A stretch of 64,000 bases of DNA. Source: Chrysemys picta bellii. Lineage: Eukaryota. Location: contig NC_088802.1 in the NCBI RefSeq assembly GCF_011386835.1, forward strand, positions 2,976,001-3,040,000. The letters are read 5' to 3'. The position numbers were made by a program, and so were the translations under genes. Shown piece by piece: positions 3,905 to 3,990 of the stretch. The first letter of the stretch is position 1. The number at the start of each line of letters is the position of its first letter. The notes beneath the pieces were generated by a model. The model had not been told where the DNA came from, did no database searches, and saw nothing but the letters and a program-made list of their open reading frames with translations.

Positions 3905-3990
3905 CTGCCAGGTTTGGGGAAGCGTCTGGGGGGGAATTGTCCCAGCTTCTATCCCCTGCCTCACAACAACCGACACTTTCACTTTCTCTC
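3905..3990 (-). promoter_or_regulatory. Putative IRF/ISRE + kB-like promoter and first non-coding exon of the 308-aa gene
   Basis: Minus strand GAGAAAGTGAAAGTG (3974-3988), GGGACAATTCCCC (~3931-3943), donor CAG|GTAGGT at 3905/3904. A second donor CAG|GTGAG lies at 3724/3723 and a candidate acceptor TAG|CAG at 2496. Confidence 0.55.

What the first reader, a model, noticed from the sequence alone, without database searches (positions are those of the whole stretch)
3905..3990. IRF/ISRE motif and kB-like site directly upstream of a strong donor oriented toward the 308-aa gene
Seen: the minus strand has GAGAAAGTGAAAGTG (3974-3988), then GGGACAATTCCCC, then CAG|GTAGGT 71 bp after the motif. Established: GAAANNGAAA is the IRF/ISGF3 element, and (A)AGTGAAAGT is the IFN-beta PRDI/IRF1 core. 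The same 11-mer, GAAAGTGAAAG, lies upstream of the paralogue; its expected count in 64 kb on both strands is about 0.03 under uniform base composition. Inference: the gene is interferon-stimulated and has non-coding 5' exons.
Basis: partly seen in the sequence, partly recalled or inferred. Interest (0 to 1): 0.78.

Follow-up and report, generated by a model that had tools for sequence, protein, structure and literature searches.

The report
Interferon-response element at a turtle gene's start
A perfect interferon/IRF response element sits right where transcripts of an unstudied, reptile-only membrane-protein gene begin, so the gene is probably switched on by interferon; that is an ordinary kind of control, here attached to an orphan gene family.

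Summary
GAGAAAGTGAAAGTG lies at 3974-3988 (minus). Its 11-mer core occurs twice in the window, against 0.03 expected. The donor CAG|GT at 3905 is really used. Assembled transcript contigs from two turtle species and two studies join 3905 to 3112, and contigs from three runs join 2967 to 2385. The gene therefore has two non-coding 5' exons: exon 1 of at least 61 nt and exon 2 of 146 nt. Both contigs that reach exon 1 stop at 3964/3965, 10 nt downstream of the element, and nothing lies upstream. The core is invariant in five turtle species and is the best-conserved block between the two paralogue promoters and four softshell-turtle copies. The stretch is not repeated elsewhere in the window. The kB-like string fails the kB consensus, lies inside exon 1 and is broken in two species. 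Interferon induction itself is inferred, not shown. The protein has two copies of a ~97-aa repeat between two hydrophobic segments, with no Pfam family and no solved-fold match. All named relatives are non-avian reptiles, apart from one weaker acorn-worm hit. The scan noted start-site ISREs at IFI35 elsewhere in this genome. Verdict: a real, ordinary ISRE promoter on an orphan gene.

The parts
3974..3988 (-). ISRE / IRF-E element GAGAAAGTGAAAGTG (core GAAAGTGAAAG at 3976-3986)
   Evidence: The core is invariant in five turtle species. It is the best-conserved block across both paralogue promoter types.
4014..4021 (-). TATA-like TAAAAATA (TATAAATA in Chelonoidis), 26 nt upstream of the ISRE
   Evidence: If it is functional, it predicts a start near 3990, about 25 nt upstream of the contig ends.
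3905..3965 (-). Non-coding exon 1. The 5' limit is a minimum: two contigs end at 3964 and 3965. The 3' end is at donor CAG|GTAGGT.
   Evidence: joint 3112/3905 in X2 and X6, records 18 and 26. Depth is zero at 4083-4886 in X1, X2 and X6.
3931..3943 (-). kB-like string GGGACAATTCCCC, inside exon 1; not supported as a kB site
   Evidence: It fails GGGRNNYYCC. The TTCC half is lost in Chelydra and altered in Caretta.
3113..3904 (-). Intron 1 (792 nt, GT..AG). It contains an interspersed repeat at about 3145-3412 and the candidate donor at 3724, which no contig used.
   Evidence: joint, depth table, loose ends at 3260 and 3303.
2967..3112 (-). Non-coding exon 2 (146 nt). It carries the ATG (3074) of a 39-codon upstream ORF that ends in exon 3 at 2374.
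   Evidence: Chelonia mydas isoforms X1 and X2 read through this exon, and X2 joins it to exon 3 at the homologous junction.
2386..2966 (-). Intron 2 (581 nt, GT..AG), with a ~60-bp tandem repeat at about 2540-2740
   Evidence: joint 2383/2965 (cut +2) in X1, X2 and X6.
1001..2385 (-). Exon 3: 79 nt of 5'UTR, the CDS at 1380-2306 (308 aa), then 3'UTR running beyond the stretch laid
   Evidence: contigs X1-1 and X2-16 are continuous; dN/dS is 0.32-0.42 against four orthologues.
16154..16171 (+). Paralogue's ISRE-like element GGAAAGTGAAAGGGAAAA. It lies about 95 nt upstream of a conserved CA|GTAAGT donor (exon end 16265) and 6.9 kb upstream of the 508-aa CDS (23121-24647).
   Evidence: The Pelodiscus gene model starts its CDS just downstream of the element.

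Best explanation
The element at 3974-3988 is the promoter-proximal ISRE/IRF-E of the 308-aa gene. After interferon signalling or virus sensing, an IRF-containing activator would bind it. Candidates are ISGF3 (STAT1-STAT2-IRF9) or IRF1/3/7, because the element fits the IRF-E/PRDI-type consensus exactly. Binding would drive initiation a few to a few tens of nucleotides downstream. The transcript has two non-coding exons, the second carrying a 39-codon upstream ORF, spliced onto one coding exon. That exon encodes a protein with two orphan-fold repeats between two hydrophobic segments. Shown here: the motif, its uniqueness, the splicing, the 5' reach of the transcripts and the conservation. Inferred: factor binding and inducibility.
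For: The motif and its rarity are. Spliced contigs from two species and two studies run from 3964/3965 through 3905>3112 and 2967>2385, and contigs are absent from 4083-4886. GAAANNGAAA occurs only once in 12.9 kb in each of Malaclemys, Chelonoidis and Chelydra, always at the orthologous place, and also at that place in Caretta. The 12 nt AGAAAGTGAAAG are invariant in five species. With a synonymous-site tree length of about 0.42, which I derived by hand from the distances, neutral survival of the 11-nt core has a probability of about 0.01. Alignment across the 308-type promoters, the 508-type promoter and four Pelodiscus copies has 61% mean identity, yet GAAAGT[G/A]AAAG is the longest conserved block. 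The stretch is single-copy in the window. From established knowledge: the element matches the IRF-E consensus G(A)AAA(G/C)(T/C)GAAA(G/C)(T/C) and the ISRE core GAAANNGAAA, and ISREs of known interferon-stimulated genes usually lie within about 200 bp of the start site.
Against: There are no expression data with and without interferon, and no paper mentions the gene. The 3' flank is GT, not the CT of the ISGF3-preferred GAAACT, so the element may favour IRF1/IRF2/BLIMP-1 over ISGF3. The whole 240-bp promoter is conserved (about 83% invariant columns), and turtle introns are already 74-92% identical, so conservation is not specific to the motif. Contigs cannot fix a start site; a TATA-like box predicts a start near 3990, which would put the element at +1 to +17. 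In Pelodiscus the second GAAA reads AAAA. The runs are only guessed to be RNA, although the canonical spliced joints argue that they are.
Confidence: 0.65

Rival explanations
1. The element is a working IRF site, but it sets constitutive or cell-type-specific expression, or repression, rather than interferon induction. It would do so through IRF1/IRF2/IRF8 or BLIMP-1 (PRDI-BF1), whose consensus AAGTGAAAGTG it also matches.
For: The GT 3' flank gives an IRF-E/PRDI-type fit rather than the ISGF3 type (consensus from established knowledge). Transcripts are present in runs from several studies with no known stimulation.
Against: In mammals, IRF-E elements of this type usually also confer interferon or virus inducibility. 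The paralogue has a triple GAAA array, typical of inducible promoters.
Confidence: 0.2
2. The motif has no IRF function. It persists because it is part of a generally constrained core promoter or 5' leader, or by slow turtle evolution and shared ancestry of the paralogues.
For: The whole promoter is about 83% invariant and the intron background is high. The two paralogue promoters may be homologous, so the shared 11-mer is not an independent event.
Against: Between the paralogues and Pelodiscus the flanks have diverged to about 61% identity while this block stays intact. The block is an exact match to a well-defined factor consensus. An 11-mer match has 0.03 expected occurrences.
Confidence: 0.1
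3. This is an enhanceosome-like promoter in which NF-kB, bound at GGGACAATTCCCC, cooperates with IRFs.
For: The string resembles GGGAAATTCC with one extra base. A GGGRNNTTYC-like block aligns in the paralogue and in Pelodiscus.
Against: It fails GGGRNNYYCC on both strands. It lies inside exon 1, downstream of the contig 5' ends. The TTCC half is deleted in Chelydra and changed in Caretta.
Confidence: 0.05

Closest known systems
IRF-E / PRDI-type element (IFN-beta PRDI GAGAAGTGAAAGTG; IRF-E consensus G(A)AAA(G/C)(T/C)GAAA(G/C)(T/C)), cited from my own knowledge
   Same: It is an exact fit to the IRF-E consensus and differs from PRDI by one extra A. Like those elements, it lies close to the start site.
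   Different: It stands alone here. No canonical kB site, GAS or second ISRE lies within 3800-4600. It fronts a membrane-protein gene, not a cytokine gene.
ISRE of classical interferon-stimulated genes (ISG54/IFIT2 GGGAAAGTGAAACT; ISG15 GGGAAACCGAAACT), cited from my own knowledge
   Same: The core is GAAAGTGAAA, identical to the ISG54 core. It is promoter-proximal, in a TATA-weak context with a short non-coding first exon.
   Different: The 3' flank is GT rather than CT, and the 5' flank is GA rather than GG. Binding of ISGF3 was not tested. The element is much closer to the mapped 5' end (about -10 to -24) than the roughly -100 position typical of ISG15 and ISG54.
Start-site ISREs of IFI35 and its neighbour in the same genome (earlier scan note s1-335666)
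   Same: According to that note, a known interferon-stimulated gene in this turtle also begins at an ISRE.
   Different: I did not re-test that note. The genes and the element sequence are different.
Tetherin/BST2 (topological analogy only)
   Same: It is an interferon-induced protein held in membranes at both ends. The 308-aa protein has hydrophobic segments at 61-79 and 284-302 flanking its repeats.
   Different: There is no sequence or fold similarity. Tetherin has a coiled coil and a GPI anchor, whereas this protein has two alpha/beta repeats with no solved relative.

Membership tests
ISRE (ISGF3-type interferon-stimulated response element) | Core GAAANNGAAA | tested here: met
   GAAAGTGAAA at 3986-3977, the only match in the first 16 kb of the window.
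ISRE (ISGF3-type interferon-stimulated response element) | Extended consensus (A/G)NGAAANNGAAACT with CT 3' flank | tested here: not met
   The 3' flank is GT in the window and Malaclemys, and GC in Chelonoidis, Chelydra and Caretta.
ISRE (ISGF3-type interferon-stimulated response element) | Lies in the proximal promoter of the regulated gene | tested here: met
   Spliced contigs reach 3964/3965, 10 nt downstream of the element, and no contig lies in 4083-4886. The exact start site is not fixed.
ISRE (ISGF3-type interferon-stimulated response element) | Binds ISGF3 and confers induction by type I interferon | not testable with these tools
   No stimulated or unstimulated expression data were available, and no literature covers the gene.
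IRF-E / PRDI-type IRF site | Consensus G(A)AAA(G/C)(T/C)GAAA(G/C)(T/C) | tested here: met
   GAAAGTGAAAGT fits at every position (the consensus is from my own knowledge).
NF-kB site | GGGRNNYYCC decamer | tested here: not met
   No match on either strand in 3800-4600. The string has one base too many between the half-sites.
NF-kB site | Conserved in orthologues, and upstream of the start site | tested here: not met
   It is broken in Chelydra and Caretta and lies inside exon 1.
Interferon-stimulated gene (gene level) | mRNA rises after interferon treatment | not testable with these tools
   This is only inferred from the promoter.
Any named protein family for the product | Pfam match above the curated threshold, or a solved-structure relative | tested here: not met
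   The best Pfam hit, PP1_inhibitor, scores 18.2 bits against a cutoff of 22.4. The PDB profile search gives E >= 0.028, Foldseek gives E >= 0.87 and VIA-align gives a best Z of 4.5, using a model of pLDDT 86.

The most novel reading that the evidence does not exclude
The ISRE marks a reptile-restricted family of interferon effectors. Members carry 2 to 20 tandem copies of a ~97-aa alpha/beta domain with no solved relative. They are held on membranes by two hydrophobic segments (the 308-aa form) or by a cationic amphipathic tail (the 508-aa form). This would be a lineage-specific antiviral or antimicrobial restriction system with no bird or mammal counterpart.
Probability: 0.35. Interest if true: 0.65.

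Novelty: new member of a known kind. Interest (0 to 1): 0.4.

Why it matters
Interferon-stimulated genes of reptiles are almost unmapped. A conserved ISRE at a verified transcript start gives a cheap, testable handle on an orphan gene family that has no known domain or fold, and whose named members are, apart from one weaker acorn-worm hit, all turtles, crocodilians and squamates. If interferon does induce it, the family becomes a candidate lineage-specific effector of antiviral defence. If not, the element is still a clean example of a deeply conserved IRF site. The control mechanism itself is textbook.

Tried and rejected
no contig supports either.
- **NF-kB site:** rejected.
- **Motif inside an abundant repeat:** rejected. 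BLAST of 3850-4200 against the window finds only itself and a (TG)n run. Transcript-contig depth there is low, whereas the true repeats at 2609-2742 and 3145-3412 show very high depth.
- **Alligator and Anolis orthologue promoters:** these could not be used. The alligator model's first exon looks like LINE sequence, and no first exon is known for Anolis. A GAAAGTGAAA upstream of a Dermochelys paralogue lies in AT-rich DNA without promoter homology and was set aside.
- **Literature:** searches for eleven locus names, two protein accessions and one UniProt identifier (fourteen in all) found nothing, and a search of one Trachemys infection study's supplements also found nothing.
- **Pfam PP1_inhibitor hit:** below threshold, so rejected.
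- **Third paralogue:** its upstream region (L009) has ISRE-like motifs, but no transcript evidence links them to the gene.

Full report
**1. Observation**

Read on the minus strand, the window has GAGAAAGTGAAAGTG at 3988..3974. GGGACAATTCCCC follows at 3943..3931, and then CAG|GTAGGT with the last exon base at 3905. The 11-mer GAAAGTGAAAG occurs exactly twice in 64 kb, at 3976-3986 (minus) and 16155-16165 (plus). Dinucleotide-preserving shuffles give a mean of 0.03, and none of 100 reaches two. GAAANNGAAA occurs 7 times against 1.31 expected, and the site in question is the only one in the first 16 kb. The gap from the motif to the exon end is 69 nt rather than 71.

**2. The gene**

- The 308-aa ORF (1380-2306, minus) is 99% identical to an uncharacterized Malaclemys protein, and 83-88% identical to those of Chelonoidis, Chelydra and Chelonia.
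- It shares a 90% cluster with uncharacterized proteins of Trachemys and Chrysemys picta bellii.
- The window protein sits on a contig of the same length as a Chrysemys picta record, and an earlier scan note calls this genome painted turtle. The window is therefore very probably Chrysemys picta.
- The gene is real and constrained, but evolves fairly fast: dN/dS is 0.32-0.42 against Chelonoidis, Chelydra and Caretta.

**3. Transcript structure**

I laid Logan contigs of four runs (three species labels, four studies) on 1001-5000. The runs are only guessed to be RNA. However, they show exon-only coverage and two joints with GT..AG on the gene strand:

- 3905>3112, in X2 (organism B) and X6 (organism A);
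- 2967>2385, in X1, X2 and X6.

The resulting structure is:

| Part | Coordinates (minus strand) | Size |
|---|---|---|
| Exon 1 | at least 3965..3905 | 61 nt or more |
| Intron 1 | 3904..3113 | 792 nt |
| Exon 2 | 3112..2967 | 146 nt |
| Intron 2 | 2966..2386 | 581 nt |
| Exon 3 | 2385 to beyond 1001 | main ATG at 2306 |

- The 5' leader is at least 286 nt. It holds one upstream ATG (3074), which opens a 39-codon ORF out of frame with the main one.
- NCBI's Chelonia mydas isoforms X1 and X2 read through exon 2, and X2 joins it to exon 3 at the homologous junction (...SWNYR|S...). This is independent support for that splice.
The predicted acceptor near 2495 is wrong, and no contig used the 3724 donor.

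**4. Where transcription starts**

- The two contigs that contain exon 1 end at 3964 and 3965. They come from different species labels and different studies.
- X1, X2 and X6 have no contig in 4083-4886.
- The ISRE therefore lies 10-24 nt upstream of the furthest transcript reach. Contigs cannot prove a start site.
- A conserved TATA-like box at 4021-4014 (TATAAATA in Chelonoidis) would predict a start near 3990, which would put the element at about +1 to +17.
- Either way, the element is within about 25 nt of the start.
- X11 (organism C) has low-depth unspliced contigs through 3478-4020. These look like DNA or pre-mRNA and were not used.

**5. Conservation**

- In 12.9-kb loci of Malaclemys, Chelonoidis and Chelydra, GAAANNGAAA occurs once each, always at the orthologous position. 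Caretta also has it there.
- In the five-species alignment, AGAAAGTGAAAG is invariant.
- From the synonymous distances I derived by hand a tree length of about 0.42 substitutions per site. Eleven neutral sites would all survive with a probability of about 0.01.
- This is tempered by two facts. The whole 240-bp promoter is unusually conserved, at about 83% invariant columns. Turtle introns here are already 74-92% identical across three species.
- The stronger footprint comes from paralogues. The promoter of the 508-aa paralogue aligns with four copies upstream of the Pelodiscus family members, where NCBI's model starts its CDS about 55 nt downstream of the element.
- When the 308-type and 508-type promoters are aligned together, mean identity is 61%, and GAAAGT[G/A]AAAG is the longest conserved block, followed by the exon-1 donor.
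- The shared 11-mer is thus probably inherited from one ancestral promoter rather than gained twice. Its survival while the flanks decayed argues for function.
- In Pelodiscus the second GAAA reads AAAA, a mild weakening of the consensus.

**6. Not a repeat**

BLAST of 3850-4200 against the window finds only itself and a (TG)n tract. Contig depth over the promoter is low, whereas the true repeats in the introns (2609-2742 and 3145-3412) reach depths of hundreds to thousands. No other copy appeared in about 170 kb of reptile loci fetched.

**7. The kB-like string**

- It fails GGGRNNYYCC on both strands, with one base too many between the half-sites.
- It lies inside exon 1.
- Its TTCC half is deleted in Chelydra and altered in Caretta.
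- I reject it as a kB site. A loosely similar GGGRNNTTYC block does align in the paralogue and in Pelodiscus.
- No GAS, CRE, Sp1 site or second ISRE lies in 3800-4600.

**8. Mechanism**

The element is an exact fit to the IRF-E/PRDI-type consensus and to the ISRE core. Its core is the same as that of the ISG54 ISRE, but its 3' flank is GT or GC rather than the CT preferred by ISGF3. These consensus sequences are from my own knowledge. It also fits the BLIMP-1/PRDI-BF1 consensus.

The most likely reading (0.65) is a promoter-proximal IRF/ISGF3 switch that makes the gene inducible by interferon or virus.

- Shown: the motif, splicing, 5' reach and conservation.
- Inferred: factor binding and induction.

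Rival readings:

- an IRF site used for constitutive or lineage-specific expression or repression (0.2);
- no IRF function (0.1);
- NF-kB cooperation (0.05).

**9. The product**

- The protein has hydrophobic segments at 61-79 and 284-302, flanking two ~97-aa repeats. The paralogue has four repeats and no such segment.
- There is no Pfam family above threshold and no PDB sequence relative.
- A single-repeat model built from 21 repeat units is confident (pLDDT 86), with two long helices plus a short one, then four strands and a C-terminal helix.
- That model has no Foldseek match (E >= 0.87) and only weak VIA-align matches (best Z 4.5).
- A full HMMER pass over 1.84 billion representatives found 104 proteins at E <= 0.001, with 2 to 20 repeats. 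Many of the weakest match only a short strand motif.
- The fifteen hits that I looked up by name are turtles, an alligator, lizards and snakes, plus one weaker acorn-worm hit.
- No paper mentions any of the fourteen identifiers searched. A Trachemys infection study's supplements do not list the gene.

**10. Verdict**

The control logic is ordinary. What is unusual is the gene it controls. Novelty: a new member of a known kind. Interest: 0.4.

**Limits**

- My single read-laying run went to the 308-aa gene, so the paralogue's exon 1 is untested.

Noticed in passing
window 32311-32326 (+): A tandem ISRE, GAAACTGAAACTGAAA (two overlapping GAAANNGAAA with the ISGF3-type CT flank), lies about 1.9 kb upstream of the Ly6-like gene region that other notes place at 34.2 kb. 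It may be the interferon switch of a LY6E-like gene.
   Followed up: no
window 3074-2967 plus 2385-2374 (-): A 39-codon upstream ORF starts in exon 2 and ends in exon 3, out of frame with the main ORF. In Chelonia mydas the same exons are annotated as an in-frame N-terminal extension (isoforms of 383 and 407 aa).
   Followed up: partly
window 2540-2740 and 3145-3412: The introns carry a ~60-bp tandem repeat and an interspersed repeat. Their transcript-contig depth is hundreds to thousands of times that of the gene, so these are high-copy elements transcribed elsewhere.
   Followed up: no
window 1649-2150: One contig of run X11 (organism C) skips 500 nt inside the coding exon, with GT..AG on the plus strand, which is antisense to the gene. 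This could be an assembly jump between the two internal repeats, an antisense splice or a species difference.
   Followed up: no
window 1289-1292: All laid transcript contigs carry about 14 extra letters in the 3'UTR relative to the window, in two variants. This is an indel difference between the assembly and the sampled animals.
   Followed up: no
window 7226-14068 (-): A long LINE lies between the two head-to-head paralogues. It has a 777-aa ORF that reads like an endonuclease/reverse-transcriptase by eye, plus an upstream 447-aa ORF, and it accounts for much of the 12 kb that separates their promoters.
   Followed up: no
L009 (Chrysemys, same chromosome), gene 10001-15805: A third family member has 20 repeats in a single 1934-aa ORF. 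An inverted pair of GGGGAAAT[T/C]GAAAGTTAG motifs lies 8-9.6 kb upstream (407 plus, 2133 minus), and a perfect GAAACTGAAACT lies 4.7 kb downstream.
   Followed up: partly
L003 (Pelodiscus) 6129, 14991, 22109, 30491: Four copies of the 508-type promoter lie within 33 kb, so the family is tandemly amplified in the softshell turtle. There the 508-type promoter drives a doubly hydrophobic, 308-like protein with three repeats.
   Followed up: partly
P0065 (Ptychodera flava, 795 aa): The only non-reptile hit that I looked up by name is an acorn-worm protein, with E = 1.7e-13 and four matched stretches. This is an odd phyletic distribution and was not examined further.
   Followed up: no
L002 (Chelydra) 360-1412 (-): In Chelydra a 291-aa family member lies head-to-head only about 2.8 kb from the 308-gene ISRE, much closer than in the window. 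The element could serve both genes there.
   Followed up: no
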